64,000 bases of DNA from Octopus sinensis (lineage: Eukaryota): the NCBI RefSeq assembly GCF_006345805.1, contig NC_043012.1, positions 50,282,001-50,346,000 on the forward strand. The letters are read 5' to 3'. Under the pieces are notes generated by a model. That model searched no databases. It worked only from the letters and a program-made list of their open reading frames with translations, and was not told where the DNA came from. Made by a program: the position numbers and the translations under genes. Shown one piece after another: positions 1-64,000 of this stretch; the first letter of the stretch is position 1; every line of letters starts with the position of its first letter.

Positions 1-30
1 GGATCTTTTGACTTCCAACAGTCTAATCTG

Positions 31-238
<208 letters not shown>

Positions 239-271
239 TGGTTTCAAATTTTGCCAACAGCGAAGCAATTT

Positions 272-451
272 TGAAGAGGGGCTATGTCGATTACATCGAC
301 CCCAGTGTTCCATTGGTGGTTAATTTATCGACCTCGAAATGATGATAGGCAAAGTCGACCTCGAAGGAATTCGAAGTTAGATCGTAGCGAGGGATGAAAT
401 ACCGCTAAGTACTTTGTCCGGTGTGCTAACAATTCTGCCAGTTCGCTGCCC
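272..451 (-). mobile_element. tRNA-derived SINE, family A (degenerate)
   Basis: Reverse complement gives an A-box-like head (ggcagcgaactggcagaattgttagc) and body gtcgactttgcc...gtcgataaatta...ggggtcgatgtaatcgac, shared with copies at 9643, 19442 and 23890. Confidence 0.85.
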
Positions 452-3893: not shown

Positions 3894-4221
3894 ATACTTT
3901 ATAATTAGGGTTTAGCAAAGATTTGCCTTACCACATACCGAAGTTTAGAAATAGCAGCCAAAAAACCTAATCTATCTCCTCTACTTTAAAAAGTATTTTT
4001 TTCTTCTTTTTCCGGGAGTCCCTTTTTAAAGTAGAGAAAATAGCTAAGGTTTTTTCGCTGCTACTTCTAAACTGCGGTATGTGGTAAAGCAAATCTTTGC
4101 TGAACACTAATTATAAAGTATCACTTAAGTTTACCGTGAAATGGTCCTTTTTCATGCCAAATTCTTCTTGGTGAAATTATTAATTACTACTTAATTAATT
4201 AATTTTACCCTTTCTTATTAT

Positions 4222-6618: not shown

Positions 6619-6651
<33 letters not shown>

Positions 6652-6820
6652 GCAACGAATTGCCTTACCACATACCGAATTTAGAAATAGCAGTCAAAGA
6701 GTTATAGCTATTTCTTCTACTAAAAAGGGGGAGATCTCAGTAAAAACAGCAATTGGAAGGCAGACACAAACAGGTAAGAGAGAATGAATTGACGGCAATC
6801 TATCATACAATTTTAAGTTA

Positions 6821-6921
6821 TCTACGGACGTACGTTTCGAAATCAAGTTTTTAGGAAAGCATAAGAATTAAATATTAAATAATTCTATCTTACCAAAAAC
6901 TTCTTTTCTCTTCAGCGTAGA
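6821..6921 (-). ncRNA. Type I hammerhead ribozyme with extended stem II
   Basis: Minus strand: UCUACG-CUGAAGA-[~70-nt hairpin closed by GAAA/UUUC]-GAAA-CGUACG-UC/CGUAGA. Stem I is 6 bp; stem III is the palindrome ACGUACGU. Confidence 0.88.
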
Positions 6922-7889
6922 ATACTATAATCATAAATGATTATATATTGAATTTTGAGATACTAGAAGGCACCAACTGAACTCAGTATCAGAGCGAGCT
7001 AGAATCCGCAACTAGTATCACCAAATTCAATGCGTGAATGAAAAGATTGTGTCACCAGCCCCTTCCCACCCGCGTGTAGCCAAAACAAGATGCTGTGGTC
7101 ACTACTGAGATAAAATAGGGTTATCCGTAATAATGAATGGTGAAATTAATTATTTGGAATAATTATCAATTACACCAAGTAGTCTTCGGCATGTAAAAGC
7201 CTCATTCGAGGAAAATTTAAGTAATACTAAGCAATAAAGGGTTTAGCAACGAATTGCCTTACCACATACCGAATTTAGAAATAGCAGTCAAAGAGTTATA
7301 GCTATTTCTTCTACTAAAAGGGGAGATCTCAGTAAAAACAGCAATTGGAAGGCAGACACAAACAGGTAACTTAAAATTGTATGATAGATGGTATGGTAGA
7401 TAACTTAAAATTGTATGATAGATTGCCGTCAATTCATTCTCTCTTACCTGTTTGTGTCTGCCTTCCAATTGCTGTTTTTACTGAGATCTCCCTTTTTAGT
7501 AGAAGAAATAGCTATACTCTTGACTGCTATTTCTAAATTCGGTATGTGGTAAGGCAATTCGTTGCTAAACCCTTTATTGCTTAGTATTACTTAAATTTTC
7601 CTCGAATGAGGCTTTTACATGCCGAAGACTACTTGGTGTAATTGATAATTATTCCAAATTAATTAATTTCACCCTTCATTATACGGATAACCATATTTTA
7701 TCTTAGTAGATGACCACAGCATCTTGTTTTGGCTACACGCGGGTGGGAAGGGGCTGGTGACACAATCTTTTCATTCACGCATTGAATTTGGTGATACTAG
7801 TTGCGGATTCTAGCTCGCTCTGATACTGAGTTGAGTTGGTGCCTTCTAGTATCTCAAAATTCATATATAATCATTTATGATTATAGTAT

Positions 7890-7988
7890 TCTACGCTGAA
7901 GAGAAAGAAGTTTTTGGTAAGATAGAATTATTTAATATTTAATTCTTATGCTTCCTAAAAACTTGATTTTGAAACGTACGTCCGTAGA
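7890..7988 (+). ncRNA. Type I hammerhead ribozyme with extended stem II
   Basis: tctacg 7890-7895, CTGAAGA 7896-7902, stem II hairpin 7903-7970, GAAA 7971-7974, cgtacg, TC 7981-7982 (predicted GUC cleavage after 7982), cgtaga 7983-7988 pairing with 7890-7895. Confidence 0.88.
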
Positions 7989-8519
7989 TAACTTAAAATT
8001 GTATGATAGATTGCCATCAATTCATTCTCTCTTACCTGTTTGTGTCTGCCTTCCAATTGCTGTTTTTCCTGAGATCTCCCTTTTTAGTAGAAGAAATAGC
8101 TATAACTCTTTGACTGCTATTTCTAAATTCGGTATGTGGTAGGCAATTCGTTGGCTAAACCCTTATTGCTTAGTATCACTTAAATTTTCCTCGAATAAGG
8201 CTTTTACATGCCGAAGACTACTTGGTGTAATTGATAATTATCCAAATTAATTAATTTCACCCTTCATTATTACGGATAACTATATATATATATATATATA
8301 TATATACATACATATCCGCATACATACATACATACATACACCCATACATACATACACATATACACACATGCACACACCCACACGTATACATATACATACA
8401 TATACGCGCATGCATACACATACAAATACATACACATACACATATACATATACATACATACACACATATATATATATATACACATACATATATATATATA
8501 GATAGATATATATATATAT

Positions 8520-9609: not shown

Positions 9610-9642
9610 GTCTATCTATCTATCTATGTATTCATATATATA

Positions 9643-9870
9643 TTTCTTTACTACCCACGAGGGGCTAAACACAGAGGGGACAAACAAGGACAGACAAAGG
9701 GATTAAGTCGACTACATCGACCCCAGTGCGTAACTGGTACTTAATTTATCGACCCCGAAAGGATGAAAGACAAAGTCGACCTCGGCGGAATTTGAACTCG
9801 GAACCTAACGACAGACGAAATACGGCTACGAATTTCGCCCGGCGTGCTAACGTTTCTACCAGCTCGCCGC
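9643..9870 (-). mobile_element. tRNA-derived SINE family A, near full length
   Basis: Head ggcgagctggtagaaacgttagc, B-box-like gttcaaattcc, tail ...gtgggtagtaaagaaata on the minus strand; near-identical to 19442 and 23890. Confidence 0.92.
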
Positions 9871-13890: not shown

Positions 13891-16800
13891 AACAGTTCAA
13901 TATTTGGTAGATTGAGGCACCAGCTACACCTCCGTGTTGCTGGGGTGTGTGCCGCATTATGTGTTTTTTTCTGCTGGTGGAAGTTTATGCCACTGGATAA
14001 ATACTGTACTTATAGTGTCTTGTATTTGTGGGTTGTTTTGTTTAGCTTTTATTATTGGATTGGTAGTGTCTTGCTTAGAATGTCGGCAGTTCTTAGCCGG
14101 GCTTTATTTTGAACAGTGAGTAGTGTTTTCTTTTCATCTTGTCCATTGCTCCTATTATTACTGGTATTGTTTTTACCTTCGTGTCCCACATTTTGAATAC
14201 TTCAAGTTCCAGGTCTTTGTACTTCTCTTTTGATGATATTTTGATCAGAGGGAAGGCTATGCCTATCAGGAAGCATGGATTTTCCCCCCAATCCTTGACT
14301 ATTATGTCTCGGCGATTAGCATTTATTTCTTTGTCGGTTTAAACCAACATATCTCATACGATTGTGGCCTGGTCATTGTATTGTACGTTGTTTGGAGCAT
14401 GCTTATCCCAACTGTTGTCAGTTTTAGTGTTTTGTCGTTAGCATATTGTCCAGTGGATATAACTGCTTACTTTGACGTGTCGGTATATATATTCAGCCTT
14501 GGCAAGGACTGGCCAACTGTCTTATTGTGATGGTTGCACATTCTGCATTTGGTGCTGAAGCCTGTTTCTATTATGTTGTTTTTATAATTGTTTGTAGTCA
14601 GGTATTGGTCTTATGCAGCGAGTATCAGTCCTTATAACCCATTGCTTTTGAGCCATTGTTGGCTACCTTCCTTTCTGTTAAGCCTCGCAGGGTATTGGCA
14701 TTGAAGTGATTTTTTTCTCTCCATTTCTTCTTCAGTATAATTTTAAATTCAGCTTTTATGTTGCTTTTTTCTCTTTAATCCTTTCTGCTATGTTGTCATC
14801 TGAGGTTAGTGTGTCAGTGTAGGGTGTTTCTGTTTTGTATTTTGTCGCCTCCCCGTGTATCGAGAAAAGCATTTTCCTTTTCTCGTGTTGCTTTACTACA
14901 TAGAGTAGTCTTCTACACTTTGTTTCTAAGTACTTTTCTAGTCCAACTGTTGTTATTTTATAGTAATTCTGTATTAGGCCACCGTGTCCTTCTGAACGGG
15001 GTAAATATATTCTATCTGCGTCTGCTTTTAGGAGATGACTTCGGTACGCTGTTAGTAGTTTTCTGGTTTTTCTGTCTAGGTTTCTCAATTCTCTTATCTT
15101 CCAGTGCATTATGTTAAAGCTGTAATTTACTACTGTTATGGCTAATGTGTTTATCCCTATTATCTTATTGTTAGCAGTTCAGTGTTTAATATTAGTCTAA
15201 CTCTTCTAATCTTCTCTTTCATTTCTGTGTGTTGCATTTTAGCTGTTTCGTCTATTCCTATATATTGGTATGGGCGGTTGTGGTCTAATTCTTTAATTTC
15301 TTTGTCTATGTCGAGTGTAGTGTTTTCAGTGCTGAATAATATGCCTCTTCTCAGTGTCGCCCTGATATATTTGTCGAGCCCCATGATCATTCCGATGTCA
15401 TTGCTGGAAATCTGGACAATGTTAATAAACTTTCTCTCTGCCATGGTGTTTTTAGCTAAAAGTTTTAGGTCATCCATGTAAAGGAGATGGTTTATTCTTT
15501 GTTCATAGTGATTTCCTTTAACAAGTCTTTTAGCAATCTCAGAGAAAGGCAGAAAAGCAGGGGTAACAGTGAGTTTCCCTGAACATTCCATCTTCTTATG
15601 GGTATAGGGTAGGTTTTAATAACTTATAAGTCATTTTTTTAATATTATACTGGTTTTACAGTTTGCCATACCATGTTTAATATATTTTAGTAGTGGAGGA
15701 ACTACCTTATTCTGGTTCAGAGATTCCTGTACACATGAGGATGCATTTTGGCAATCAATCAAAGTCCTGTTCAGGTTTATCTTTCTCCTCTTACAGTCCT
15801 TTATAATGCCTCGGTTTAAGAGAAGTTGCTCTTTACAGCCATATGTCCAGTTTCGCGTTGATTCTGGCTCACTTACCAGTAAATTGAACTCTGTCACTAA
15901 GTGGTTATGGGTACTGGTGTTGTGTTTCAACCAGAAGTTGGGGACCTTGTCTATACCTGGAGTTTTCCAGTTGCTGAAACTCCTCAGTATGTCCATGATC
16001 TCTTGGCCTGTGCTGATGGGCCATATATGTTGTTCTACTGTGTTCTTCATTTCTGTTTCATTATTAATCCACTGAGCATTTTTGTTGCTTTTTTAGTTTG
16101 CTCCATATTGCTTCACAGTATGAATCAATCGCTGATGTTGTTGGCATGGCATCTATTGATACCGTTGTCTTTCTTTCTTTTCTTTTTTTGCTTAATTTTC
16201 TATAAAACTTTTTGTGTTTATTTTGAATTCTCTATTTTGTTCAAAGTAACGTTCCCGTTTTTCATACTGATTCATGCTGCTATGCCCTGCTAAAGTTTTC
16301 CTTTTACCTCCAAGGAATCTTCTTTAATTTTTATGCTGAATTTTTTTGTTATATGAGGCTTTATTTTTCATCTTTCATATTTGATCCCGTTCTCTTTCAT
16401 TCAGAAAACTTGTGATAAGACTTTCTTCTGTTTTTGAATTATATTTGTCACGATCTAATTCCATTTTGGGGTTTGATATTTGGCTACTTTTCTTTGTAAG
16501 GGTCAAGTTCAGTTTCCCTAGATATGGCTACAGCTGTTAAGTAGATGAAGCCATTTAGTTTGTTCATATCTAGTGTATATTTTGAGATGGTCATTATTAC
16601 TTGTAAGGCTCTGTCGTATCTATTTACCCTTTCATAGAGCTGTTTATTTTTCTGTAGCCTGGCGAGACTTTTATGCTGGTACATATTTATCGACTGCGTA
16701 ATGTTTAGTTTTTCTACTTTTGATATTTCTTCAGTCTCCATCCTCGGTTGTAGCTGGTTTGTTATATTGTGTGTTATTTTGTTTGTTGTCATTTTGCGCT

Positions 16801-19340: not shown

Positions 19341-19441
19341 ATGATGCCCTATCAATTTAAACGTCTATGTTGTATTACATGGCGACATTTTGCTACTTCT
19401 TCTCTCGTTTCCCCTCCCCAAATTTCAGTTATATTATAACA

Positions 19442-19665
19442 TCCATTTCTTTACTACCCACAAGGGGCTAAACACAGAGAGGACAGACAAACGGATTAAG
19501 TCGATCACATCGACCCCAGTGCGTAACTGGTACTTATTCAATCGACCCCGAAATGATGAAAGGCAAAGTCGACCTCAGCGGAATTTGAACTCAGAACGTA
19601 ACGGCAGACGAAATACTGCTAAGCATTTCGCCCGACGTGCTAACGTTTCTGCCAGCTCGCCGCCT
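19442..19665 (-). mobile_element. SINE family A with 13-bp target-site duplication (TSD)
   Basis: Full-length copy; ttatattataaca at 19429-19441 and 19666-19678. Confidence 0.92.
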
Positions 19666-19799
19666 TTATATTATAACACCACTTATCGCGTTATATTATA
19701 ACATCACTTATCCTTCACTTGCCCTAGGGTGCTGAGTATGTCTCGGCAAGTGATTGCAACAAACATGCAGATTAAAAGTAAGTAACAATAATGATAATA

Positions 19800-20793: not shown

Positions 20794-21384
20794 TTGTGTG
20801 TGTTCACCTTTGGTGATGTAAAGAGCAAATTAGAATTCAAAGCACAAGTATACATATTTTCTTTCTGATACTCATTAAAAAATACGGACCGATTATTAAG
20901 ACGAGCCTTTCATACTGGTTTCACATTAAGCGGAATACATGTACACATCTGTCATAATAATAGTTCCTTGGATTATTATTATTATTATTATTATTGTACA
21001 AGTTACGAAAGCAATTACAACTACAAGTGGATAATTCATATTCTTGAAATCGTTTGCCCCTTATGTGGTTCCATAATGAAAAGGAAAAGAAATATGGAAA
21101 GTTTAATGTGATGTGTGCATTCATACGTACATAGACACACACATACACACACACACACACACACGCACACATACCAACACACGCATATATGCATGGTTGT
21201 TTGTATTTATATTTACACACACACATATATATATATATATGTGTGTGTGTGTGTATTTATCTATATCTATACATATTAACATAGATATTTGTGTATATCT
21301 TTTATATTTATGTATATATATATATATATCTATATACATATATATATATATGTATGTGTGTGTGTGTGTGTGTGCGTGTGTGTG

Positions 21385-21590
21385 TGTCTGTGTTTGTTCC
21401 CCCAACATCGATTGACAACTGATGCTGGCGTGTTTACGGCACGGTAACTTAGCGGTTCGGGAAAAGAGAACGATAGAATAAATACCAGGCTTACAATGAA
21501 TAAGTCCTGGGGTCGATTTGCTCGACTAAAGGCGGTGCTCCATTATAGCCACAGTCAAATGACTGAAACAAGTAAAAGAGTAAAACAAAA
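21385..21590 (+). mobile_element. SINE family C, 3' part
   Basis: cgtaacttagcggttcgg...ggggtcgatttgctcgactaaaggcggtgctcca...gactgaaacaagtaaaag matches the 55533 copy. Confidence 0.85.
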
Positions 21591-22295: not shown

Positions 22296-23889
22296 ATTTT
22301 TTCCGTAATGAGATAAAAAAAACAAGGTTGTGTAGATTTTAGAACATATATTTGCATATATATTTTAAATACATATATATATATATATTTATATATATAA
22401 TATATATATATATATATTTATACATACATATATATTTATATATATAAGTATATATATGAAGATAGCTATGGATAGATATATAGATACGTATAGATATAGA
22501 CATGTGCATATTCATAGAAGCACACGCACACAAACTCTCACACAGACAGTTCTCTTAAGAAAGCCTATATACTTGCATAGATGCATGTATGAACAAATTG
22601 ATCTGTATTTATAGCTATTGATTTGTGTTATAATATATGTTGCAGTGGATATATACACCAGATATCGGTGGTTAAAAAATTTGTAGAATATCGATTAGAA
22701 CGTTGCAATTAATCAGAAGAAGGCTAAAATACCATAAGACACACAGTATATACGGTTTTGTGTTAGTAGTTACACACGCACATATACATATACATATACA
22801 CAAAGTTACATGAATATATACAGAGAAACGGGCAGGTAAATACTTATATAGAAAGTGAAACTGATAGAAACTGAAAGTGAATGTGAAACTGATAGAGTAA
22901 ACGTCTATGGAAATATCAGTAGTAGCATTATAGTTTTCTATAAAGATAAAAAGTTTGTGCATGAATATATGTATGTGTGTGTATGTATGTACGTACTGTT
23001 AGAAAATGGAAAATGAAGAACTAGTAGAATGTGTGAGTGCGTGTGTGAGAGAGAGAGAGAGAGGGGGAGAAGAGGGAGAGAGAGAGAGAGAGAGCGAGAT
23101 GGAAATAGAAAGTAAGCCATAAGTGTAAGTAATCATATGAAATATATATATTTTCCATCAGACAAATAGATAATCAATAAATAAATTAATTTACGCTCCT
23201 GCTATTTGATAAGTTAAAGAAGAAATATTGCTTCGCGTTTGTGACGCCTACTGATCAATACTATTATTGTGAATCGAAATTAAACCGTGTTCCCACCTAT
23301 CTAAACCCAGCTAAATCCCCACCCATAAAATTGCTCCACCTACATGAACATATTAACGCAAATCGTTATTAGTTTATTAAAAACCGCGAAACAATTAATA
23401 AGTTCTGTGATGCCATGTTCATTCCAGACATTCTAATTAACTGTGAGGAATAAGTTGGCCTTGCAATTACTTGTCTTTTCTTATTAAATGAAGAAAATTA
23501 AGAACAGACAAACTTTGTTGATTGGAAAGTCTATGAATGTTCAGACAGATTTTCTTACACATAATACAAACTACATTATTTATATCAAAATTTACTTCTC
23601 CTAATAAATATATAGATCATGCGGCCTGTGATTGTAGCAGGAGCAATTGGATATATGTTAAGGTTATTCACCCCGTCACGTTTTTGTATTAGGCCATTTA
23701 TACAACCAGAATATCGACGGAGGATTCGTTAGTTAAGCAACTTCTATTTTGTGAATTCTGCACCAAAAACGTTATATATTCATTTCTGTTAATATACATA
23801 TGTATTTACATGTATAAATGCATGTATGTATATATGTAACTATGTATGTATTTAGACAAGAACTTATTTAATTATATAAGGCAGTGAAA

Positions 23890-24109
23890 GGCGGTGAGCT
23901 GGCAGAATCGTTAGCATGCCAAGTGAAATGCGTAGCCGTATTTCGTCTGCCGTTACTTTCTGGGTACAAATTCCGCCGAGGTCGACTTTGCCTTTCATCC
24001 TCGATAAATTAAGTGCCAGTTACGCACTGGGTTCGATGTAATCGACTTAATCCGTTTGTCTGTCCTTGTTTGTCCTCTCTGTGTTTAGCTCCTTGTGGGT
24101 AGTAAAGAA
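23890..24109 (+). mobile_element. SINE family A with 14-bp TSD, inserted in the head of an older SINE
   Basis: ataaggcagtgaaa at 23876-23889 and 24110-24123; a degenerate SINE body continues to ~24270. Confidence 0.9.
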
Positions 24110-24567
24110 ATAAGGCAGTGAAATAGCACAGTCGCTATAAACGTCCGACATAATGGCTGCGGTATTCGTTCCGAATTCTTGTCTTCTGAGTTCAAGTTCT
24201 ACGCTTTTTAGCTTCATCCTTCGCTGCGTCGTGAATAATAAATGCCAGCACTTTACTGGGACGGATTTTTCTTTCTTATTTTATCGCCTTCTCCTTTACT
24301 CATTTGTAGAAATCGGCTGTAATCAGATTCGTCAGTTATAGGCTTCACTCGGTTTAAAACGCCGAGGAACCGCCTTATATAACGACAGTTTCGCTACCAT
24401 TCAGTCAGATGTCCATGACCGAAAATAGAACACATACATGCATATACGCATAAACTCTCTATTTCACCCCTTCTCAGCCACACGCAAACACAGAAGCTTG
24501 CTTCTCAGCCTTGTGAGTGTATTTGGTAGGCAGAAACTGAAAGAATCCCGTTCTATGTATATATATA

Positions 24568-28670: not shown

Positions 28671-31600
28671 AAGTAAAATATGAAATGTTGATACACATTT
28701 CGGGAAAATGTGTTATATTTAGAACAAAATAGAAAATTTCAATTAGTCAATACTAAATGTAATTTACGCTTTATACAAAACATGACGAAAAGGATATATG
28801 TGGATGCTTAACATGATATTCGTCATCATCCATAGGTATGTAGCTATCAGTGATCTGTGATATATTCCATGTACAAAAATTCGCGCAGGTATCGGCAACG
28901 ATTCACCCTGCCTCTGATACAACTCATTTTCATCTAGGTAGACTTGAACACGAGAAAATCTTGCCGAAGGATAGGACATAAGCATATAATAATTCGATTT
29001 TGACTCAAAAAGCCACACCATTAAAACTTGAACTCTCACCATATGAGACAAATAGGAGTCAAATTTATTTCTAACCACATGCTAATATGGGAACGGAAAG
29101 GAATTATCGGATAATATAGTTCTAGAAATTCATCAAAACAAATTCAATGATTATGGCTTGGAATTCGTCTGACCATAAACAGTTGGTGTCGCCTTGAAAG
29201 TTGATGTAAACAAAACACGATCCTCTCTAAATCTCACTTTCAGACTTGAGTGACTAAATGATGAGTACCACTGGAAAAAGATTAACACATTTATTTGAAA
29301 CATTATAATTTGTTTGATATTCACATAGTTTAGGAGGATGATTCAGATAAGTGTAGCTAGGAGTTTTCTATTTCTTGATCGAGTGTAGCTGTCTGAGTTG
29401 TGGTTGTTTATCTGCTTTCAATAAGTTACAAAATACGAAATACGAAACACATCCTTCCTTGAGCAAGACATAAATACCCAAATGTATATTTCAGGTACAA
29501 TTTTTATTTATGCTTCAATGGTAAAATCTGGACGATTCAAGTCAAATAGTAGTCTACGGAATCACTTGAATATCATAACATCAAAACCCCGGAAAAGCAA
29601 TTTTGTTGTGAATTTTCTAAATAATCTCGATACCGTATGCAGATGGAACGTATGAGCAACGTTGAAAATATTGAATTAATTCGACGTAGAATCTTGTACA
29701 TATATGATTTTGCTACTTGTCAGACTTTGGTAGCATGTTGAGAGACGCACAGCCCTCTAATTGATATATCGGAATATCGCAGTACAGCTACAAGAGCCGG
29801 TATTCAAACAAGAACGTATTATAAAAAGATGTGTTATAAAATGCTGAGTTCTTTTCATAGCATGAATCTATTAGTAGCTCATAAAAATATGCTTTGTTTA
29901 TTAAACCACATTCACACAAACACACACAAACAGACACGCACACACACACTTGAATTGTTAATGATCAGTCAAATTCCCATAATATTGATGTTGCTGCGGA
30001 TGACAAAACAAATTGTGGAATGTAATACAAGAATAAATATAAAATCGATTTTCATACAGTTAGCTTCTTTACCTGATATAATAACCCTACAACACGACTC
30101 TTCATTATAGAAAACGTAAACATATATGACCTGTTACAACAAGGTAGCCGATAACCTTAACAAGGTATCCTAACATCTGAAAAAACGAAAGGTGGAAAAT
30201 ATCTCTTCCTTATAGTTACAAAGAAACGCAAGTTCCTGGCATGCAAAATCTATAAGAAACGAAATGTAGACATTTTGAGATATTTGAATATTACTATGGC
30301 TTTCAAACAAAATATATATAAATGTAAAGAAAGGGGTGCATATTATGTTAAAGAAAACCTAAAATTAGATAGAAATGGTACACAGAAATTGGTAGACAGA
30401 TCCATACACGCATCGATATGTACATATACAATCGCACTTTTACTGTAAGTTATTTTATGTTTATGTATTGATTAGAAATTTTGCACAACATATGGAGTTT
30501 TGCATAATTTTTTGTCGAATATATTCCAAAAGTGATGTAGATAACGATCATGTACGCAAACGGCAGTTACTGATGTTAGATATAAGTTATGTCAGTTGAA
30601 ATATTGTTAAAAGGCTACAATTAGAACTTTCTCATCGTGATATGGAACTTTGGGTGTCAAAATATTATTATCGTATCTTTATTTGACATTAAGACAACAG
30701 CATTGGCTTATTACCAATAGTAAATAAATAAATATCCTCTCGTCAGTACAAGTGAATAATTACTTTATTAATATTGAGATATCTTAACAGTGCTCTCAAC
30801 TGTTCTACCTTTAGGTAACGTTACTATTGGAACACCATTATTTACTTAACAAAAATATCTATGCTTCATAAAATACATTTTTAAGTACATTTTTGTGAGT
30901 TTTCAATACATACATTTGGACATTTTTGCATTTTAGCTGTGCTTCTTCTTCATTTGGCCGATGTTGCCACAAGTAACAATATTTATCACTAACTTACCTA
31001 TTAATTATATTTTGTAACATGTGCAGAATTATTTTTTACAGTTTCGATTCTATATGTGTACATAACCATACATGCAGATACTTTAATTGTTTGTCGGAAT
31101 TGTATAACATCTGCAAACACATTTTCAGTTAGTGAAATAGAGAAGGTATATAATACGAATTAAATTATTTAAAAAATTATAAAAAGATGAATAATGCGAA
31201 AATTATAATACGAAAAAATTTATAAAAAGTTTTATAAAAAGGAATAAAACTTACTCAATATTTACCATTGTTATTAGACATAGATGTTTGTAACAAATAG
31301 CACGATAGCGTACGCTGTACACCTAATGCGACAAATGCCTTGTCAAGGTGTAACACTAAGAAAGATAGTATTCGTTCGAGAGTATGATATAACACGGAAA
31401 AGATTTTTCCTTCTTATATTTAATCGCACAAACTACACAACATTAATCTACATACATGCATATATATATATATAAATAAATATATATATATATATCCGTA
31501 ATAATGAAGGGTGAAATTAATTAATTTGGAAAAATTATCAATTACACCAAGTAGTCTTCGGCATGTAAAAGCCTCATTCGAGGAAAATTTAAGTAATACT

Positions 31601-31784
31601 AAGCAATAAGGGTTTAGCAACGAGTTGCCTTACCACATACCGAATTTAGAAATAGCAGTCAAAGGGTTATAGCTATTTCTTCTACTAAAAAGGGAGATCT
31701 CAGTAAAAACAGCATTTGGAAGGCAGACACAAACAGGTAAGAGAGAATGAATTGACTGCAATCTATCATACATTTTTTTAGTTA

Positions 31785-31891
31785 TCCACGGACGTACGTT
31801 TCGAAATCAAGTTTTTAGGAAAGCATAAGAATTAAATATTAAATATTAAATAATTCTATCTTACCGAAACTTCTTTTCTCTTCAGCGTAGA
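31785..31891 (-). ncRNA. Type I hammerhead ribozyme with extended stem II
   Basis: Mirror image of 31964-32070; same core and stems. Confidence 0.88.
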
Positions 31892-31963
31892 ATACTATAA
31901 TCATAAATGATTATATATAATCATATATATAATTCAATATATAATCATTTATGATTATAGTAT

Positions 31964-32070
31964 TCTACGCTGAAGAGAAAAGAAGTTTCGGTAAGATAGA
32001 ATTATTTAATATTTAATATTTAATTCTTATGCTTTCCTAAAAACTTGATTTCGAAACGTACGTCCGTGGA
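31964..32070 (+). ncRNA. Type I hammerhead ribozyme with extended stem II
   Basis: tctacg 31964-31969, CTGAAGA 31970-31976, hairpin 31977-32052, GAAA 32053-32056, cgtacg, TC (cleavage after 32064), cgtgga. The A>G change relative to the 7890 copy gives a U-G wobble that keeps stem I paired. Confidence 0.88.
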
Positions 32071-32255
32071 TAACTAAAAAAATGTATGATAGATTGCAGT
32101 CAATTCATTCTCTCTTACCTGTTTGTGTCTGCCTTCCAAATGCTGTTTTTACTGAGATCTCCCTTTTTAGTAGAAGAAATAGCTATAACCCTTTGACTGC
32201 TATTTCTAAATTCGGTATGTGGTAAGGCAACTCGTTGCTAAACCCTTATTGCTTA

Positions 32256-32314
<59 letters not shown>

Positions 32315-32495: not shown

Positions 32496-32500
<5 letters not shown>

Positions 32501-33596
32501 CCGGACTTCTTTCTGATGATCTCGCTACTGATATGCTCTCTCAACGAGATACCAAGCATTGACCTTTCCATGGCTTTTTGAACCGTTACTAGTCTTTGCT
32601 CTTCTCTCTTTGTGGTAGCCCATGTTTCACTACCATATAACAGTGCAGGTAGAACTATACTGTTGATGAGGTTCGCGCGGGTGGTTCTGTCCAACCTTCC
32701 CTTCAGCACATCCTTTATGCCATTAAATGCCTTCCATCCAGCCCTTACTCTCCGTGAGATCTCCTTTTCGATATCTCGGCACATATTCACTTCCTGTCCC
32801 AGGTAGACATGTTCCTTTACCTCCTCTATTTCATCACTGCCGATCACCATTCGACCTGTTGGTACGTTGTCTGACCGCATGAACTTCGTATTCATGCGGT
32901 TCATCTTGAGACCTACTGCAGAGCTTTTGATGTCGAGCTCCATCAGCATGGTCTGAAGTTGATTCATGGTTTCAGCGATGAGTACGATGTCGTGAGCGAA
33001 ACGGAGGTGGGTGAGGAGTTCGCCATTGATGTTGACACCTTCTTGCCAGTCGATGCCTCTGATGATCTGTTCGGGACATGCGGTGAAATGTTTTGGGGAA
33101 ATGATATCCCCTTGCTTCACTCCCTTCTCGACCGGCACTCGTGCAGGTGATGACAGTAGAGCTATGTCGGTGGTGCATCCGGAATTTGCGGCCCTGAGCA
33201 GTTGCACTTATTGCGCCTCGACTCCTTGCCTCTGCAGCGAGTTCAGCACTGCGTTGGTTTCGACGCCATCGAAGGCCGTCTCATAGTCTACAAATCAGAA
33301 AGAAGTCCGGCGTGAGGGATGTCATCGCAGAGTATACACGCAGCAAGTTTAGATGGGCTGGACACGTCGCCCGGCTCACCGATGATCGGTGGACCCACGC
33401 AGTTGTTGAGTCGTACCCGCACGAGCGGAAACGAGCACCCGGAAGGCCTCCACGACGGTGGAGTTACGATTTCAGGAGGACGATTGGGATCACGTGGATG
33501 AGAAAGGCGCGATCCAGAGAGGAGTAGACAGCGTGCTGTGACCAGCGGTGTCATATGTACGCCTGACGGACTGGTCGGTCAAGGTGATCAAGGTGA
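32496..33596. mobile_element. RTE-clade LINE copy with inverted 5' segment
   Basis: 32496-33293 encodes the RT on the minus strand (FVDYETAFDGV...GVKQGDIISPK...LTHLRFAHDIVL...YVYLGQ-like...LLYGSETW). 33294-33596 encodes the continuation on the plus strand (KFRWAGHVAR...GRPPRRW) and ends in (TCAAGGTGA)2 followed by (TA)n. Confidence 0.92.
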
Positions 33597-37119: not shown

Positions 37120-37280
37120 CCATAGTGGTGAGTTTACACCCCCGTAACTTAGTGGTTCGACAAAATAGTAAAATAGAATAAGTACTTGGCTTACAAAGGA
37201 TAAGTTCTGGGGCCAACTTTTTCGACTAAAGGCGGGCTTCCAGCAAGGCTGCACTCAAATGATTGAAACGAATAAAAGAA
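37120..37280 (+). mobile_element. SINE family C, 3' part
   Basis: ccccgtaacttagtggttcg...gactaaaggcgg...gattgaaacgaataaaag. Confidence 0.75.
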
Positions 37281-41809: not shown

Positions 41810-42005
41810 CACATTTTGGAACAAGGCCAGCAATTTCAGAGGAGAAAGTAAATTCATTACAACAACTCCAATGTTCAACTCGTACTTATTTTATCGACCC
41901 CGAAAGGATAAAAGCTGACCTTGATGAAATTTGAACTCAGAACGTGAGTTGGCCGAAATGCACTTTATCCGTTGTGCTAATTATTCTGCCAGCACTCCGC
42001 CTCAC
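41810..42005 (-). mobile_element. SINE family A (degenerate)
   Basis: ttatcgaccccgaaaggataaaag...tttgaactcagaacgt...tgctaattattctgccagc. Confidence 0.8.
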
Positions 42006-43284: not shown

Positions 43285-43478
43285 TTAAGACGTCGGACAA
43301 AACGCTTAGCGGTTTTTCGTTCGTCTTAACGTTTTGAGTTCAAATTCCACCGTGGACGACTTTACCAATCAACTTTTAGGGGTCGATAAATTAAGTACCA
43401 GTGGAACAACGGGGTCGATGTAGTCGAGTTGTCCCCTCCCCCCAAATGTCAGGTTTTGTGCCTTTAGTAGAAACGATC

Positions 43479-43636: not shown

Positions 43637-43845
43637 CATCATTATTATTATTATTCGGTGAACTGGCAGAATCGTTAGCATGCCGAGGTAAATGCTTAGC
43701 GATATTTTGTCTGTCGCTACGTTTTGAGTTCAAAATCCACCTAGATCGACTTTGCCTTTCAGTTTCGATTAAATGAATACCAGTTAAGTAAGCGATTTGA
43801 TCTCTTCTCCCAAATTTCAGACCTTTTGCCTACAGTAGAAACGAT
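43285..43845 (+). mobile_element. Two SINE family A copies separated by an (ATC)n/(ATT)n microsatellite
   Basis: Copies at ~43285-43475 and ~43655-43845, each with gagttcaaa..cc...gacttt; repeat tract at 43476-43655. Confidence 0.8.
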
Positions 43846-44760: not shown

Positions 44761-45164
44761 ATTATCTTCCCCGCCACTTTCTTCTAAAACCTTTGTATGC
44801 TATGCAAATGTCCTTTCTTTTTCAGTTTTCAGTGTATATCGTGTATACATTCTTTATTTCTATCACTCTTTTTTTCTTTCTTTCTTTCTTTCTTTCTCTA
44901 TTTTTTTATCCTTTCATTATATGTAAAACCCCACACTTTGTGACTGTCTTTGTATTATCCTCCTCATCCCTCGCATTTGTGACAAATAAATTAAATCATC
45001 ATCATCATCATCATTATTGTTGTTGTTGTTGTTGTTGTTATTATTATTATCATTATTATTATTATATTAGGCAGCAAGCTGGCAGAATCTTTAGCATTCC
45101 TGGCAAAATGCGTAGCGGCATTTCGCTCGGCGCTACGTTCCGAGTTCAAATTCCGCTGATGCTG

Positions 45165-55532: not shown

Positions 55533-55940
55533 GGCGCGGGAGTATCTGTGTGGTAAGTAGATTGCTTACCAACCACATGGTTCCGGGTTCAGTTCCACTG
55601 CTTGGCACCTTGGGCATGTGTCTTCTACTTTGGCTTCGGGCCGACCAAATCCTTGTGAGTGTATTTGGTAGAGGGAAACTGAAAGAAGCTCGTCGTATAT
55701 ATGTATATATACGTGTGTATGTTTGTGTGCCTGTGCTTGTCCCCACAACATCGCTTGACAACCGATTCTGCTGTGTTTACGTCCCCGTAACTTAGCGGTT
55801 CGGCAAAAGAGACCGATAGAAAAAAGTACTAGCCTTAGAAACAATAAGTCCCGGGGTCGATTTTCTAGACTAATGGCGCTGCTCCAGCATGGCCGCAGTC
55901 AAGTGACTGAAGCAAGTGAAAGAGTAAAAAAGTAAAAGAG
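55533..55940 (+). mobile_element. SINE family C, near full length
   Basis: tRNA-like head, internal (TA/TG)n, and 3' tail ggcgctgctccagcatggccgcagtcaagtgactgaagcaagtgaa(agagtaaaa)n. Confidence 0.9.
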
Positions 55941-59089: not shown

Positions 59090-59275
59090 TCTCTTTGTTT
59101 CAGTCATTTGATTGCAGCCATGCTGGAGCACTGTCTTTAATCGAGCAATTCGATCGCAGGAGCTATTCTTTGTAAGCCTAGTACTTATTCGTTCGTTGAG
59201 TTTGTCCGAACCGCTAAGTTACAGGGACGTAACAACCCCAGCGTCGGTTGTCAAGCGATGTTGTGGGGACAAAAA
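59090..59275 (-). mobile_element. SINE family C, 3' part
   Basis: Reverse complement of the cgtaacttagcggttcgg...gtgctccagcatggctgcaatcaaatgactgaaa tail. Confidence 0.85.
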
Positions 59276-59716
59276 CACACGCAAAAATACACACACACAA
59301 ACACACACATTCATTTAATAGACATACACATGCATATATTTATGTACACAAAACCACATGATTATACGCATACTTTGTTTCTGAATAGACGTTGTGTAAT
59401 TGAAAATCGTTTCATGTACTTATAGGAATTTTCTCGAGGATGCAACTTGTAACTCTTGTGAAATGTTCTATTCGGATGTTGAAGCATTTCCCTCAGTCAT
59501 ATATATTATCCACCAAATTCCATGATGAAACTTATTTCGCAATCGTACTTGGTGAAGTGGCCATCTGTTGTTTCGAGTTTACGTGCTTATATGCTTAAAA
59601 TCTACCTCTTTTTGACGGGCGTTTGCTCAGATCTAACCCAAGAATGCATGATTTAAATGGTGCTAACACAGCTCTAATGACTTTTGAACGTCAGCACCAT
59701 AATTGTGCTCTTCTTT

Positions 59717-62430: not shown

Positions 62431-62445
62431 GATAAATCAACAACG

Positions 62446-62488
<43 letters not shown>

Positions 62489-62519
62489 TAATAATAATAA
62501 TAATGATAATAATAATAAT

Positions 62520-64000
62520 ATGGTTCATCTGGAAGCGGGTCCTATGGTTAATCTGGAAGCGCGTCCCCCAGGGAAGAGACAGCCTGGGATCGAAAAGTCA
62601 TCAACTGGCACAAACTCTTCTCCGAATACGGACATGGATGGTCACTTGAACGGGAAATTCCCCAACTCGAGCCCTCCAAGTTCACCACCACAGCCACCAC
62701 AGAAAGAAAAATGTAAGCGGAACAAATGGACCCGAGAAGAGTATAAAGAAGTAATATACGCTTATTACTATGCATTAGGTAGGCCATCTCAAGAGAGACA
62801 CACCGCAAACTCTTACAGTATATGGAGAACACGGAATCAAGACAGTAGGCCCTATTTCGACGAGAGCAAATTGGCAAATGTGAGGAGGGATATCCTTAGA
62901 AATAACAGACTCACAGACAGTGAAATAAGCGCGATCAAGCACGCAACGGAAAATGACATAAATATAAGACACAAAATAAATGAAGAATCAGATGAACAGA
63001 ATAGCCCGCCACGAGGCTTAATTGAAACACTGCCATCTGACCAAAGCACGCAAAGGCCTGAAGATACAAGAAATTCTATTGAACCTGTTAAAAATAGTCA
63101 GGAAAATGATAAAACAACAGTAACTGAAGATCTCGCATTTGCTGAAGAACACAGAGTGTCTATGGCAGAAATGAGGCAGAATATCCTGAATACGCTTGAA
63201 GTTGTAAGACATACAAGTATGAATGATAGAGAACCACTTCATACACTCTCAAATACAAACCAAAATAAAAAAAAAACAAATCCAAATTGGCAACTATATA
63301 ACAAATGAAATAATACAAGAATTAAAACCTGATTTTACTGAGTTAAATGAAATTATTTACGCTTCTGCTAGGGCAATTGAAACCAGCTGTATGCCCCAAA
63401 CCTGGGAAGAAATCAAACCTGGAGAAGTAAAATTGAAAAAGAGATTGAATTTATGAGAGGGGAAATATCAATATTAAATGAACTAATATGCGGAAATGAT
63501 GTAAGATCCAGAACAGGAAGAAAGATGAAGAGAAAATTTGGATCCTCACCAAGAGAAGAACTGATATCAATAAAAGAAACGCTGAAACAAAAAGTCCAAG
63601 CAAAAGCTCAAAGAATACGAAGATTTGAGAAGAGAAACAAGTTTTACATGCAAAATAAGCTGTTCACATCCAATGCCAAAAAATTCTACAGAGAAATAGG
63701 GAAGGAGAAAGTAACCGTTAAAGACCCCCCTCCCATGGAAGAAGTTCAAAACTTTTGGGAAAGGATTTGGAGTGACGAGAAGACGTACAACATAAATGCA
63801 GACTGGATTATACAAACAGAAGGATCCTACCAAAATTTACAACAACAAGCATGGGAAGACATCACAATAGCAGACCTAAGAAAAGCACTCACGAAGGCCC
63901 ATAACTGGAAATCCCCCGGTAAAGATAGGGTGCCGAATTTCTGACTCGCATTGCTCCCATACGCACACGGTAAGCTAGTTCAGCTGCTCAATGGAATTAT
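62520..64000 (+). mobile_element. R4/Dong-type LINE, 5' part of ORF (runs off window)
   Basis: ORFs 62520-63308, 63223-63456 and 63453-63944: KRNKWTREEYKEVIYAYYYA, LKQKVQAKAQRIRRFEKR, FWERIWS, HNWKSPGKDRVPNF. Two frameshifts and a stop; directly preceded by (TAA)n. Confidence 0.9.

What the first reader, a model, noticed from the sequence alone, without database searches (positions are those of the whole stretch)
6651..8280. Retrozyme-like ~590-bp tandem unit carrying a hammerhead ribozyme, arranged as a head-to-head foldback
Seen: a non-coding unit repeats with period 594 in the left arm and ~590 in the inverted right arm, each arm holds a complete type I HHR (6821-6921 minus, 7890-7988 plus), and both ends join (TA)n. 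Known: Penelope-like elements carry minimal type I HHRs, and metazoan non-LTR retrozymes are tandem HHR-bearing non-autonomous repeats processed to monomers and circular RNAs, usually a few hundred nt long as I recall. Inference: this is a large-unit retrozyme family. Arms longer than one unit (about 1.2 and 1.5 units) imply a multimeric or circular RNA template.
Basis: partly seen in the sequence, partly recalled or inferred. Interest (0 to 1): 0.92.

Follow-up and report, generated by a model that had tools for sequence, protein, structure and literature searches.

The report
Hammerhead-ribozyme repeat inserted as foldbacks
A 588-base non-coding repeat carrying a self-cleaving hammerhead RNA motif sits three times in this animal-type window, each time as a head-to-head double copy inside a (TA)n microsatellite, which fits a known class (animal retrozymes, or non-autonomous Penelope-like elements) and is not a new kind of element.

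Summary
There is a foldback at 6650-8285 with arms of 1.22 and 1.51 units (period 588-594). Each arm holds one complete type I hammerhead (HHR), at exactly the stated coordinates, and both ends abut (TA)n.

My generic HHR descriptor finds only these motifs plus two more in a second copy, and none in 300 shuffled windows. Rfam Hammerhead_1 aligns full-length but below threshold (16.6-20.9 bits against 34), because helix II carries a 64-72 nt insertion.

New findings:
- Two further foldback copies exist (31489-32259 and 3907-4218), each also in (TA)n.
- Inner ends are variable and, in copies 2 and 3, nearly symmetric.
- Arm-to-arm identity is 100%, 97.4% and 89.4%, consistent with arms identical at birth, so each foldback probably arose in one event.
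- All six outer junctions show 2-4 nt of TA microhomology.
- One arm is always about 100-130 nt shorter at its outer end.
- One inner end lies 1 nt from the HHR cleavage site.

These are the published hallmarks of Penelope-like-element integration. No arm has two same-sense HHRs, so none of these loci can release a monomer. Unit length is within the published range (51-972 bp).

Verdict: a new member of a known kind. Interest is moderate and rests on the integration signature.

The parts
6625..6651 (.). Left flanking (TA)n run, the presumed insertion target.
   Evidence: Perfect 27-nt TA run abutting the left arm.
6650..7369 (-). Copy 1 short arm. Covers unit positions 49-588 then 1-173 in minus orientation. 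Its outer end stops at ...GCTA|(TA)n.
   Evidence: blastn and nhmmer against the unit. 97.4% identical to the right arm over 719 nt. Junction read.
6821..6921 (-). Type I hammerhead motif of the left arm, with the standard G10.1-C11.1 pair. C17 lies at plus-strand coordinate 6827, and cleavage is predicted between 6827 and 6826.
   Evidence: Descriptor hit. Rfam Hammerhead_1 at 20.9 bits, E=0.0044, full model. Fold.
7370..7395 (.). Central filler between the arms. It is a 20-nt plus-orientation duplicate of unit positions 9-28, joined to the left arm through AGGTAAC/AGATAAC microhomology, followed by GGTATG.
   Evidence: Direct repeat family D11. Sequence reading.
7396..8285 (+). Copy 1 long arm. 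Covers unit positions 2-588 then 1-302. Its inner end starts 1 nt after the predicted HHR cleavage site. Its outer end stops at ...CTATAT|(TA)n.
   Evidence: The sequence at 7390-7400 compared with 7978-7990.
7890..7988 (+). Type I hammerhead motif of the right arm. It carries C11.1->U, giving a G-U pair at the base of helix II. Cleavage is predicted between 7982 and 7983.
   Evidence: Descriptor hit. Rfam Hammerhead_1 at 16.6 bits, full model. Fold.
8281..8306 (.). Right flanking (TA)n run.
31489..31918 (-). Copy 2 long arm. Covers unit positions 469-588 then 1-299 in minus orientation. Contains a hammerhead at 31785-31891 (-). Outer end stops at ...GGATA|(TA)n.
31935..32259 (+). Copy 2 short arm. 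Covers unit positions 467-588 then 1-193. Contains a hammerhead at 31964-32070 (+). Outer end stops at ...AGTAT|(TA)n. The two arms are 100% identical over 323 nt.
3907..4218 (.). Copy 3, an old diverged foldback. It comprises unit positions 101-179 in minus orientation (3988->3907) and 83-287 in plus orientation (4008-4217). It contains no HHR part. (TA)n lies on both sides. The arms are 89.4% identical.

Best explanation
The three loci are independent, dead-on-arrival retrotransposed copies of one non-coding 588-nt element. The element's RNA carries a type I hammerhead ribozyme. It is an animal non-LTR retrozyme or, equivalently, a non-autonomous derivative of a Penelope-like element (PLE).

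The ribozyme. The hammerhead has the standard metazoan layout:
- Helix I is 6 bp, followed by a 2x2 internal loop and a closing stem.
- Helix II is 4 bp, followed by an internal loop.
- Helix III is 2 bp, capped by the palindromic loop GUAC.

The ACGUACGU stretch is self-complementary. The ribozyme is therefore expected to cleave poorly alone and to work when two copies pair, as in multimeric transcripts. Its odd feature is a 64-72 nt hairpin extension of helix II.

Proposed insertion pathway (inferred, not shown):
1. A reverse transcriptase/endonuclease that nicks (TA)n, most likely from a PLE, primes cDNA synthesis where the (TA)n 3' end anneals to a short UA patch in the RNA near unit position 288-302.
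2. It copies the RNA towards its 5' end, through more than one unit in copy 1. The template could be a multimeric RNA, a circular RNA, or template jumping between RNAs.
3. At a variable point it turns back onto the nascent cDNA. In copy 1 this happened at the very 5' end left by hammerhead cleavage.
4. It copies the cDNA back, making a second, initially identical inverted arm.
5. That strand joins the other (TA)n end by TA microhomology at the next UA patch (position 173-202). This leaves the second arm about 100-130 nt shorter.

Shown: the anatomy, the statistics of the motif, the one-event origin of the paired arms and the microhomologies. Inferred: the enzyme, the order of steps, the form of the RNA template and ribozyme activity.
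For: Hammerhead motif:
- The core and helices are present in all 4 copies. My descriptor gives 0 hits in 300 shuffled windows. Relaxed descriptors expect 0.03-0.28 per window.
- Rfam Hammerhead_1 aligns over its full length at the same coordinates.
- The helix layout matches the canonical metazoan type I description: 6 bp, 4 bp, and 1-2 bp with a palindromic loop, active as a dimer (PMC4209133).
- A two-copy cofold forms an 8-bp intermolecular helix III, -57.0 against 2 x -22.3 kcal/mol.

RNA-level element:
- The plus-sense circular monomer folds at -156.7 kcal/mol, z=-5.8, with 0 of 100 shuffles as stable. The minus sense gives only z=-2.2.
- There is no coding capacity; the longest stop-free stretch is 62 aa.
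- GC content is 34.6%.

Independent insertions:
- There are three loci with different inner breakpoints.
- All lie in (TA)n, which covers only 3.8% of the window.

One event per foldback:
- Arm-to-arm identity is 100%, 97.4% and 89.4%. It falls as each copy's divergence from the family rises.
- Both arms of copy 2 share every variant that separates it from copy 1.
- Inner ends are nearly symmetric (469/467 and 101/83).

Junctions and ends:
- All six outer junctions end in 2-4 nt of TA-type microhomology.
- The copy 1 long arm starts at unit position 2, 1 nt from the cleavage site.

Match to published PLE insertion features:
- 5' truncation, partial tandems, an adjacent inverted 5'-truncated copy, an extension present at one end only, and (TA)n bias (PMC8557442).
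- Retrozymes have been proposed as PLE derivatives.
- An RTE LINE in the same window shows the different, classical twin-priming inversion with non-overlapping segments.
Against: - No hammerhead reaches Rfam's gathering score.
- A helix II extension of 64-72 nt is atypical.
- With only two independent lineages there are no compensatory changes, so there is no covariation support.
- One copy has C11.1->U.
- No PLE reverse transcriptase or GIY-YIG endonuclease was found in the window, so the partner enzyme is unidentified.
- No locus has two same-sense hammerheads.
- No related DNA or pseudo-protein was found in any accessible collection. Copy number, source arrays and expression are therefore unknown.
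- The outer part of the copy 1 long arm (7983-8285) has about three times more private changes than the other segments. Simple rolling-circle copying of one monomer does not predict this.
- The shorter arm differs by 100-130 nt, whereas the 'tail' described for PLEs is 30-40 bp.
- The cleavage-site coincidence is a single case, with roughly a 4-6% chance over the arms examined.
Confidence: 0.7

Rival explanations
1. The element is mobilised by a LINE, for example the RTE-type element present in the window, in the manner of a SINE. The foldbacks would then be twin-priming products, and no PLE is involved.
For: RTE-type reverse-transcriptase fragments lie directly beside copy 2. That LINE copy itself carries an inversion made during target-primed reverse transcription. 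No PLE was detected in the window.
Against: The unit shares no sequence with the RTE or with anything else in the window, whereas LINE-dependent SINEs usually share the LINE 3' end. Classical twin priming gives adjacent, non-overlapping RNA segments, as the RTE shows: aa 2-244 inverted, aa 230-328 direct. The hammerhead element instead gives overlapping arms, near-symmetric in copies 2 and 3. The outer end of the inverted arm does not sit next to the inner end of the direct arm in unit coordinates.
Confidence: 0.12
2. This is a DNA-level phenomenon. Either a satellite or an extrachromosomal circular DNA was captured at fragile (TA)n sites and turned into palindromes by fold-back repair or replication, or it is a foldback-type DNA transposon. 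The hammerhead plays no part in the spread.
For: (TA)n tracts are self-complementary and prone to breakage. Long palindromes tend to lose their centres symmetrically, which could mimic symmetric inner ends. No RNA evidence is available.
Against: The two outer termini of each copy are different sequences, so there are no terminal inverted repeats at the ends. One arm always runs 100-130 nt further. The unique flanks beyond (TA)n are not mirrored. Three different centres would require three independent events or deletions. The strand-specific RNA structure signal and an intact ribozyme core in all four copies point to selection on an RNA.
Confidence: 0.1
3. The hammerhead-like motif is inactive or a chance resemblance, and the repeat is an ordinary non-ribozyme interspersed repeat.
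For: Rfam scores are sub-threshold. The helix II insertion is very long. There is no covariation.
Against: All core nucleotides are present, with the canonical helix lengths and a palindromic helix III. There were 0 hits in 300 shuffled windows. The four motifs are the only hits in 64 kb even under relaxed rules. One arm ends at the predicted cleavage site.
Confidence: 0.06
4. The foldbacks are assembly artefacts, produced by chimeric fold-back reads.
For: The arms of copy 2 are 100% identical. PLE-type structures are known to trouble assemblers.
Against: There are three loci with different centres. The arms of copies 1 and 3 have diverged (97.4% and 89.4%). Arm lengths are unequal and the unique flanks are not mirrored.
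Confidence: 0.02

Closest known systems
Animal non-LTR retrozymes (Cervera & de la Pena 2020, PMC7229834; Li, Clavereau & Pollet 2026 preprint, 10.64898/2026.07.22.740005)
   Same: A type I hammerhead sits inside a non-coding, low-GC unit that is repeated head-to-tail. The RNA is predicted to be strongly self-paired. Unit length lies within the published 51-972 bp range.
   Different: The window shows only 1.2-1.5 units per arm and one hammerhead per arm, not arrays. The copies are inverted doublets inside (TA)n. Helix II carries a 64-72 nt extension in place of a short capped loop. Circular RNA has not been tested.
Penelope-like elements and their pLTR hammerheads (Cervera & de la Pena 2014, PMC4209133; Craig et al. 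2021, PMC8557442)
   Same: The insertion architecture matches: variable 5' truncation, partial tandem, an adjacent inverted 5'-truncated copy, an extra stretch at one end only, and a (TA)n microsatellite target. The hammerhead has a short palindromic helix III. Paired hammerheads on opposite strands 100-700 bp apart have already been reported in Schistosoma mansoni.
   Different: There is no reverse transcriptase or GIY-YIG ORF. The whole unit is 588 nt and non-coding. The one-sided extension is 100-130 nt, not 30-40 bp. The hammerhead has the canonical 6-bp/4-bp helices, not the 'minimal' PLE form.
Newt/salamander satellite 2 hammerhead repeats (about 330 bp), as described in PMC7229834
   Same: A type I hammerhead with a very weak helix III and a palindromic tetraloop that needs two copies to cleave. 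The unit is non-coding.
   Different: Those occur as long tandem satellite arrays. Here the copies are dispersed, truncated and inverted. The unit is nearly twice as long.
Non-autonomous Chlamys/PLE derivatives such as MRC1 (PMC8557442)
   Same: Short non-coding elements that produce pLTR-like partial tandems and multicopy head-to-tail insertions, presumably using PLE enzymes in trans.
   Different: They come from green algae, most lack canonical hammerheads, and they show no sequence relationship to this unit.
Plant LTR retrozymes (PMC4918200)
   Same: Non-autonomous retroelements of 600-1000 nt whose RNA is cut out by hammerheads and circularised.
   Different: The plant elements have type III hammerheads inside true LTRs, a PBS and PPT, high GC content and Gypsy-type mobilisation. 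None of these features is present here.

Membership tests
Hammerhead ribozyme, type I (Rfam RF00163) | Conserved core: C3-U4-G5-A6-N7-G8-A9, G12-A13-A14, the A15.1-U16.1 pair, and H17 at the cleavage site. | tested here: met
   CUGAAGA ... GAAA ... U-C is present in all four copies.
Hammerhead ribozyme, type I (Rfam RF00163) | Three helices around the core, with helix I open-ended. | tested here: met
   Helix I is 6 bp, helix II is 4 bp plus an extension, and helix III is 2 bp plus the GUAC loop. The minimum-free-energy folds reproduce helices I and II.
Hammerhead ribozyme, type I (Rfam RF00163) | Score at or above the curated gathering threshold (34 bits). | tested here: not met
   Scores are 16.6-20.9 bits, with no hit in the whole-window scan. 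The shortfall coincides with a 64-72 nt insertion in helix II.
Hammerhead ribozyme, type I (Rfam RF00163) | Site-specific self-cleavage. | not testable with these tools
   This needs in vitro transcription of monomer and dimer constructs. The only indirect hint is that one arm begins 1 nt after the predicted cleavage site.
Hammerhead ribozyme, type I (Rfam RF00163) | Covariation supporting the helices. | tested here: inconclusive
   Only two independent lineages are available. The changes seen are U-A to U-G in helix I (copy 2), G-C to G-U at 10.1-11.1 (copy 1, right arm), and non-compensated changes in the helix II extension.
Animal non-LTR retrozyme | At least two consecutive tandem units, each with a complete hammerhead (the operational criterion for an active retrozyme; preprint 10.64898/2026.07.22.740005). 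| tested here: not met
   Each arm of copies 1 and 2 holds a single hammerhead, and copy 3 holds none.
Animal non-LTR retrozyme | Non-coding, low-GC (<45%) unit of a few hundred bp, repeated head-to-tail. | tested here: met
   The unit is 588 nt with 34.6% GC. The longest stop-free stretch is 62 aa. The arms span 1.22 and 1.51 units.
Animal non-LTR retrozyme | Highly self-paired unit-length RNA. | tested here: met
   In silico only. The circular plus-strand minimum free energy is -156.7 kcal/mol, with 66% of bases paired and z=-5.8.
Animal non-LTR retrozyme | Expression as linear and circular unit-length RNA. | not testable with these tools
   No transcriptome or organism identity is available.
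Animal non-LTR retrozyme | Co-occurrence with autonomous PLEs in the same genome. | not testable with these tools
   No PLE domains were found in the window's ORFs, but 64 kb cannot decide this.
PLE-type insertion architecture | Variable 5' truncation, together with an inverted 5'-truncated copy adjacent at the 5' side. | tested here: met
   Inner ends lie at unit positions 49/2, 469/467 and 101/83 in the three foldbacks.
PLE-type insertion architecture | Partial tandem (pLTR-like) organisation. | tested here: met
   The copy 1 arms run through the unit boundary for 1.22 and 1.51 units. The copy 2 arms also cross the boundary.
PLE-type insertion architecture | Microsatellite, in particular (TA)n, insertion bias. 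| tested here: met
   Five of six ends directly abut perfect (TA)n of at least 8 units. The sixth lies next to a decayed (TA)n. Such runs cover 3.8% of the window.
PLE-type insertion architecture | A 30-40 bp 'tail' present at one end only. | tested here: inconclusive
   One arm is always longer at its outer end, but by about 100-130 nt.
PLE-type insertion architecture | PLE reverse transcriptase plus GIY-YIG endonuclease encoded by the element or by a partner. | tested here: not met
   The unit is non-coding. No such ORF was found in the window. A partner elsewhere in the genome could not be searched for.
Foldback / TIR DNA transposon | Matching inverted sequences at the two extreme termini. 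| tested here: not met
   The termini lie at different unit positions (173-202 against 288-302) and share no sequence.

The most novel reading that the evidence does not exclude
These foldbacks may be a sequence-level record of how animal retrozymes move. In this reading, a PLE-type enzyme primes on multimeric, self-cleaved hammerhead RNA from a nicked (TA)n. It runs to the ribozyme-generated 5' end or stalls earlier, snaps back on its own cDNA, and closes the insertion by TA microhomology.

If a genome-wide census confirmed three things, the proposed retrozyme-PLE partnership would turn into a defined and testable integration mechanism. It would also give in vivo evidence that the ribozyme cuts the transposition template. 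The three things are:
- an excess of inner ends at the cleavage site;
- symmetric centres;
- fixed pairs of outer ends.
Probability: 0.3. Interest if true: 0.6.

Novelty: new member of a known kind. Interest (0 to 1): 0.4.

Why it matters
Which enzyme mobilises animal retrozymes, and from what form of RNA, is still open. PLEs are the proposed partner on grounds of co-occurrence and sequence relatedness (PMC7229834; preprint 10.64898/2026.07.22.740005).

This family shows the PLE insertion signature directly on a non-coding hammerhead element: inverted 5'-truncated doublets, partial tandems and (TA)n targeting with microhomology. One cDNA end also falls at the ribozyme cleavage site. The 100% identical arms of copy 2 suggest recent activity.

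The family would therefore be a convenient substrate for testing the mechanism. Otherwise it is an ordinary repeat of a known class. Neither its unit length nor its hammerhead core is exceptional.

Tried and rejected
Searches that found nothing or only artefacts:
1. The Rfam whole-window scan at gathering threshold gave no hammerhead hit. The 1.7-kb scan at E<=10 also gave none. Only narrow stretches exposed the sub-threshold Hammerhead_1 alignments. The many microRNA-precursor hits are artefacts of the long inverted repeat.
2. Exact-pattern scans found nothing. I used the hammerhead 3' half plus the start of the unit, and the most conserved unit block, against metagenome contigs, prokaryotic genome contigs and viral contigs. 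No outside copies were available for covariation or a census.
3. I used the longest unit-derived pseudo-ORF (64 aa) to fish for mis-called proteins on contigs carrying the repeat. Nothing was found.
4. An exact look-up of the neighbouring RT ORF found nothing on record.

Organism identification failed:
5. The two LINE-derived queries gave at best 80% identity (an RTE-type protein named for Scleropages formosus; turtles 62-64%) and about 50% identity (unnamed ENA contigs). The source organism stays unknown. It is inferred to be a metazoan from the LINE content and the hammerhead type.

Models considered and rejected:
6. Classical twin priming was rejected for the foldbacks. The arms overlap in unit coordinates, and in copies 2 and 3 they are near-symmetric. 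This contrasts with the RTE copy at 32500-33563.
7. The TIR/foldback DNA transposon model was rejected because the extreme termini differ.
8. Pol III termination at the T4 run just after the long-arm end was rejected, because the unit contains many other T4-5 runs.
9. Rolling-circle copying of a single circular monomer was not adopted as the only model. The segment 7983-8285 carries many private variants, and some of them are shared with copies 2 and 3.
Full report
**1. What is in the sequence**

Region 6650-8285 is a head-to-head foldback made of one repeated non-coding unit.

- Direct repeats recur at 592-594 nt in the left half and 588-590 nt in the right half.
- Inverted repeats of 100-150 nt link the halves at 96-99% complementarity.
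- I number the unit from the base after the predicted hammerhead cleavage site. blastn and nhmmer then give this map:
  - The left arm, in minus orientation, is 7369->6650. It covers unit positions 49-588 then 1-173 (719 nt, 1.22 units).
  - The right arm, in plus orientation, is 7396-8285. It covers unit positions 2-588 then 1-302 (890 nt, 1.51 units).
  - A 26-nt filler at 7370-7395 lies between them. It contains a 20-nt duplicate of unit positions 9-28, joined through an AGGTAAC/AGATAAC microhomology.
- Both ends abut perfect (TA)n runs, at 6625-6651 and 8281-8306.

**2. The hammerhead**

Each arm contains the following motif:

5'-UCUACG / CUGAAGA / G-A-A-A ... helix II ... U-U-U-C / GAAA / C-GUAC-G / U-C | CGUAGA-3'

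All core positions are present:

- C3-A9 reads CUGAAGA, and G12-A14 are in place.
- The A15.1-U16.1 pair and C17 in a GUC triplet are present.
- The typical G10.1-C11.1 pair is present in three of the four copies. The right arm of copy 1 has U11.1.

The helices are as follows:

- Helix I is 6 bp, followed by a 2x2 internal loop and a 3-bp closing stem.
- Helix II is 4 bp, followed by an internal loop and then a long imperfect hairpin.
- Helix III is 2 bp, capped by GUAC.

This is the layout described for canonical metazoan type I hammerheads. That description gives helix I as 6 bp, helix II as 4 bp, and helix III as 1-2 bp with a 2-4 nt palindromic loop, poorly active alone and active as a dimer (PMC4209133). 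Consistent with this, ACGUACGU is self-complementary. Two copies cofold with an 8-bp intermolecular helix III while keeping helices I and II, at -57.0 against 2 x -22.3 kcal/mol.

Statistics of the motif:

- My generic type I descriptor requires helix I of at least 5 bp, helix II of at least 4 bp and helix III of at least 2 bp.
- It finds exactly four motifs in the 64-kb window, all in this repeat family.
- It finds none in 300 dinucleotide-preserving shuffles.
- Two relaxed descriptors still find only those four, against 0.03 and 0.28 expected per window.

The descriptor was written after I had seen the motif, but it uses only textbook constraints.

Rfam results:

- There is no hit at gathering threshold, and none at E<=10 on 1.7 kb.
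- When narrow stretches are given, Hammerhead_1 (RF00163) aligns over its whole model at exactly these coordinates.
- Scores are 16.6, 20.9 (E=0.0044) and 17.8 twice, against a gathering score of 34.
- The alignments show a perfect core and a 64-72 nt insertion in helix II. This plausibly accounts for the low score.

There is no covariation evidence, because only two independent lineages are available.

**3. Two more copies change the picture**

The unit occurs at two further places in the window.

| Copy | Coordinates | Arms in unit positions | Hammerheads |
|---|---|---|---|
| 2 | 31489-32259 | 469-588 + 1-299 (minus); 467-588 + 1-193 (plus) | one per arm |
| 3 | 3907-4218 | 101-179 (minus); 83-287 (plus) | none |

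Copy 3 is an old copy, 75-83% identical to the unit. Both are again head-to-head foldbacks, and both again sit in (TA)n. Several regularities emerge across the three copies.

(a) The inner ends differ between copies. Within copies 2 and 3 they are nearly symmetric.

(b) Arm-to-arm identity is 100% over 323 nt in copy 2, 97.4% over 719 nt in copy 1 and 89.4% over 94 nt in copy 3.
- This parallels each copy's divergence from the family.
- The two arms of copy 2 share every variant that separates it from copy 1.
- The two arms of a foldback were therefore probably identical at birth, so each foldback most likely arose in a single event.

(c) In each copy, one arm ends at unit position 173-202 and the other at 288-302. 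One arm is thus always about 100-130 nt shorter at its outer end.

(d) All six outer junctions end in 2-4 nt that match the (TA)n...GCTA|...CTATAT|...GGATA|...AGTAT|...TATAT| and ...CTTAT|.

(e) The long arm of copy 1 starts at unit position 2, which is 1 nt after the predicted cleavage site.

(f) Perfect (TA) runs of at least 5 units cover only 3.8% of the window. The (TA)n association is therefore not chance.

**4. Nature of the unit**

- It is non-coding. The longest stop-free stretch in a dimer is 62 aa.
- It has 34.6% GC.
- As a circular RNA, the hammerhead-sense strand folds to -156.7 kcal/mol with 66% of bases paired. This gives z=-5.8, and 0 of 100 shuffles are as stable. The antisense strand gives only z=-2.2.
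- This strand asymmetry points to selection on an RNA of plus polarity.
- No arm has two hammerheads in the same sense. None of the loci in the window could release a unit-length RNA by double self-cleavage. They are truncated daughter copies, and the source arrays, if any, lie elsewhere.

**5. Most likely mechanism**

The published description of Penelope-like-element (PLE) insertions reads like a description of these loci (PMC8557442):

- strong 5' truncation;
- partial tandems forming pseudo-LTRs;
- an inverted 5'-truncated copy immediately adjacent;
- an extension present at only one end;
- an insertion bias for (TA)n.

Canonical PLEs also carry hammerheads in their pseudo-LTRs. Paired hammerheads on opposite strands 100-700 bp apart have already been seen in Schistosoma mansoni. 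Animal retrozymes have been proposed to be mobilised by PLEs (PMC7229834). More recently they have been proposed to derive from PLE pseudo-LTRs (preprint 10.64898/2026.07.22.740005).

My best explanation is therefore target-primed reverse transcription of a hammerhead-bearing non-autonomous RNA at nicked (TA)n. The proposed steps are:

1. Priming occurs by TA microhomology near unit position 288-302.
2. Copying proceeds over up to 1.5 units.
3. The enzyme snaps back onto the nascent cDNA at a variable point. In copy 1 this was at the ribozyme-made 5' end.
4. The insertion is closed by TA microhomology near position 173-202.

The anatomy and statistics are shown. The enzyme, the order of steps and the form of the template (multimer, circle or template jumping) are inferred.

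One observation speaks against simple rolling-circle copying of one monomer. The segment 7983-8285 has roughly three times more private differences than the other segments, and a few of them are shared with copies 2 or 3.

**6. Rivals**

- **LINE partner.** An RTE-type LINE fragment lies directly beside copy 2. That LINE copy shows the classical twin-priming inversion. Protein P0001 residues 2-244 match the minus strand at 33228->32500, and residues 230-328 match the plus strand at 33258-33563. These are adjacent RNA segments with a short overlap. The hammerhead element's arms instead overlap in unit coordinates and, in copies 2 and 3, are near-symmetric. The unit also shares no sequence with the LINE.
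- **DNA-level palindrome formation or a foldback DNA transposon.** This is disfavoured because the extreme termini differ, the unique flanks are not mirrored and the three centres differ.
- **Assembly artefact.** This is unlikely for the same reasons, and because the arms of copies 1 and 3 have diverged.
- **Chance or dead hammerhead motif.** This is unlikely on the statistics above, but activity is untested.

**7. Comparison with what is known, and novelty**

The element works like an animal non-LTR retrozyme or non-autonomous PLE derivative, and most probably is one.

[quoted passage not shown] No locus in the window meets it.
- The partner PLE is unidentified.
- The unit length of 588 nt lies inside the published 51-972 bp range, so 'large-unit' is not a distinguishing feature.
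- The unusual points are the 64-72 nt extension of helix II and the clean, repeated foldback-in-(TA)n architecture on a non-coding element.

I rate it a new member of a known kind. Interest is moderate (0.4). The interest lies in the integration signature, which could make the open question of retrozyme mobilisation testable by a genome-wide census.

**8. Limits**

- The source organism could not be identified.
- No related sequences were found in any accessible DNA collection.
- Copy number, source arrays, PLE partners, expression, circularity and cleavage all remain open.

Noticed in passing
window 32500-33563: An RTE-type LINE fragment with a classical twin-priming inversion. Residues 2-244 of the best homologue (P0001, 80% identity) match the minus strand at 33228->32500. 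Residues 230-328 match the plus strand at 33258-33563, an overlap of about 15 aa. The outer end of the inverted part abuts the microsatellite next to copy 2.
   Followed up: partly
window 7983-8285: The outer partial unit of the copy 1 long arm carries about 10 private differences in 300 nt. The other three segments of the same foldback carry roughly 1%. A few of its states (a C at unit position 193 and a shortened T run near position 178) are shared with copy 3 or copy 2. This suggests that the template units were already heterogeneous.
   Followed up: partly
window 7520-7560 (unit positions about 125-165); also 3920-3960 and 4040-4085: The block GCTATTTCTAAATTCGGTATGTGGTAAGGCAA is almost invariant, even in the old copy 3, which is 75-83% identical to the unit overall. 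It is the best-conserved part of the unit outside the hammerhead. No function is assigned.
   Followed up: no
window 283-450, 9642-9870, 19345-19698, 23887-24111, 41856-42002, 43290-43430, 43656-43786, 45059-45159: A short interspersed repeat of about 230 bp (SINE-like) is present in eight copies at 68-88% identity.
   Followed up: partly
window 21317-21525, 37134-37202, 55713-55869, 59141-59422: A second short interspersed repeat is present in four copies at about 78% identity, each lying next to a microsatellite.
   Followed up: partly
window 14759-16092 (-) and 62436-63941 (+): Decayed LINE-type remnants. The first has a weak RVT_1 match with a YMDD-like motif on the minus strand. The second is a LINE 5'/ORF region whose best homologues are unnamed ENA proteins at about 50% identity. 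Neither looks like a Penelope-like element.
   Followed up: partly
window 7285-7526 and 31850-32005: Strong-looking Rfam microRNA-precursor matches (for example MIR8562 at 70.9 bits and MIR4208 at 64 bits, all below gathering score) sit exactly on the foldback centres. They are artefacts of the long inverted repeats.
   Followed up: yes
whole window: The window has 34.7% GC. 8.4% of it lies in perfect 1-4 nt repeats of at least 12 nt, and there are 106 perfect (TA) runs of at least 5 units. Long (TAG)n, (TAA)n, (ATT)n, (ACAT)n and (TCTA)n arrays are also present. This is an unusually microsatellite-rich animal-type genome whose species could not be identified.
   Followed up: partly
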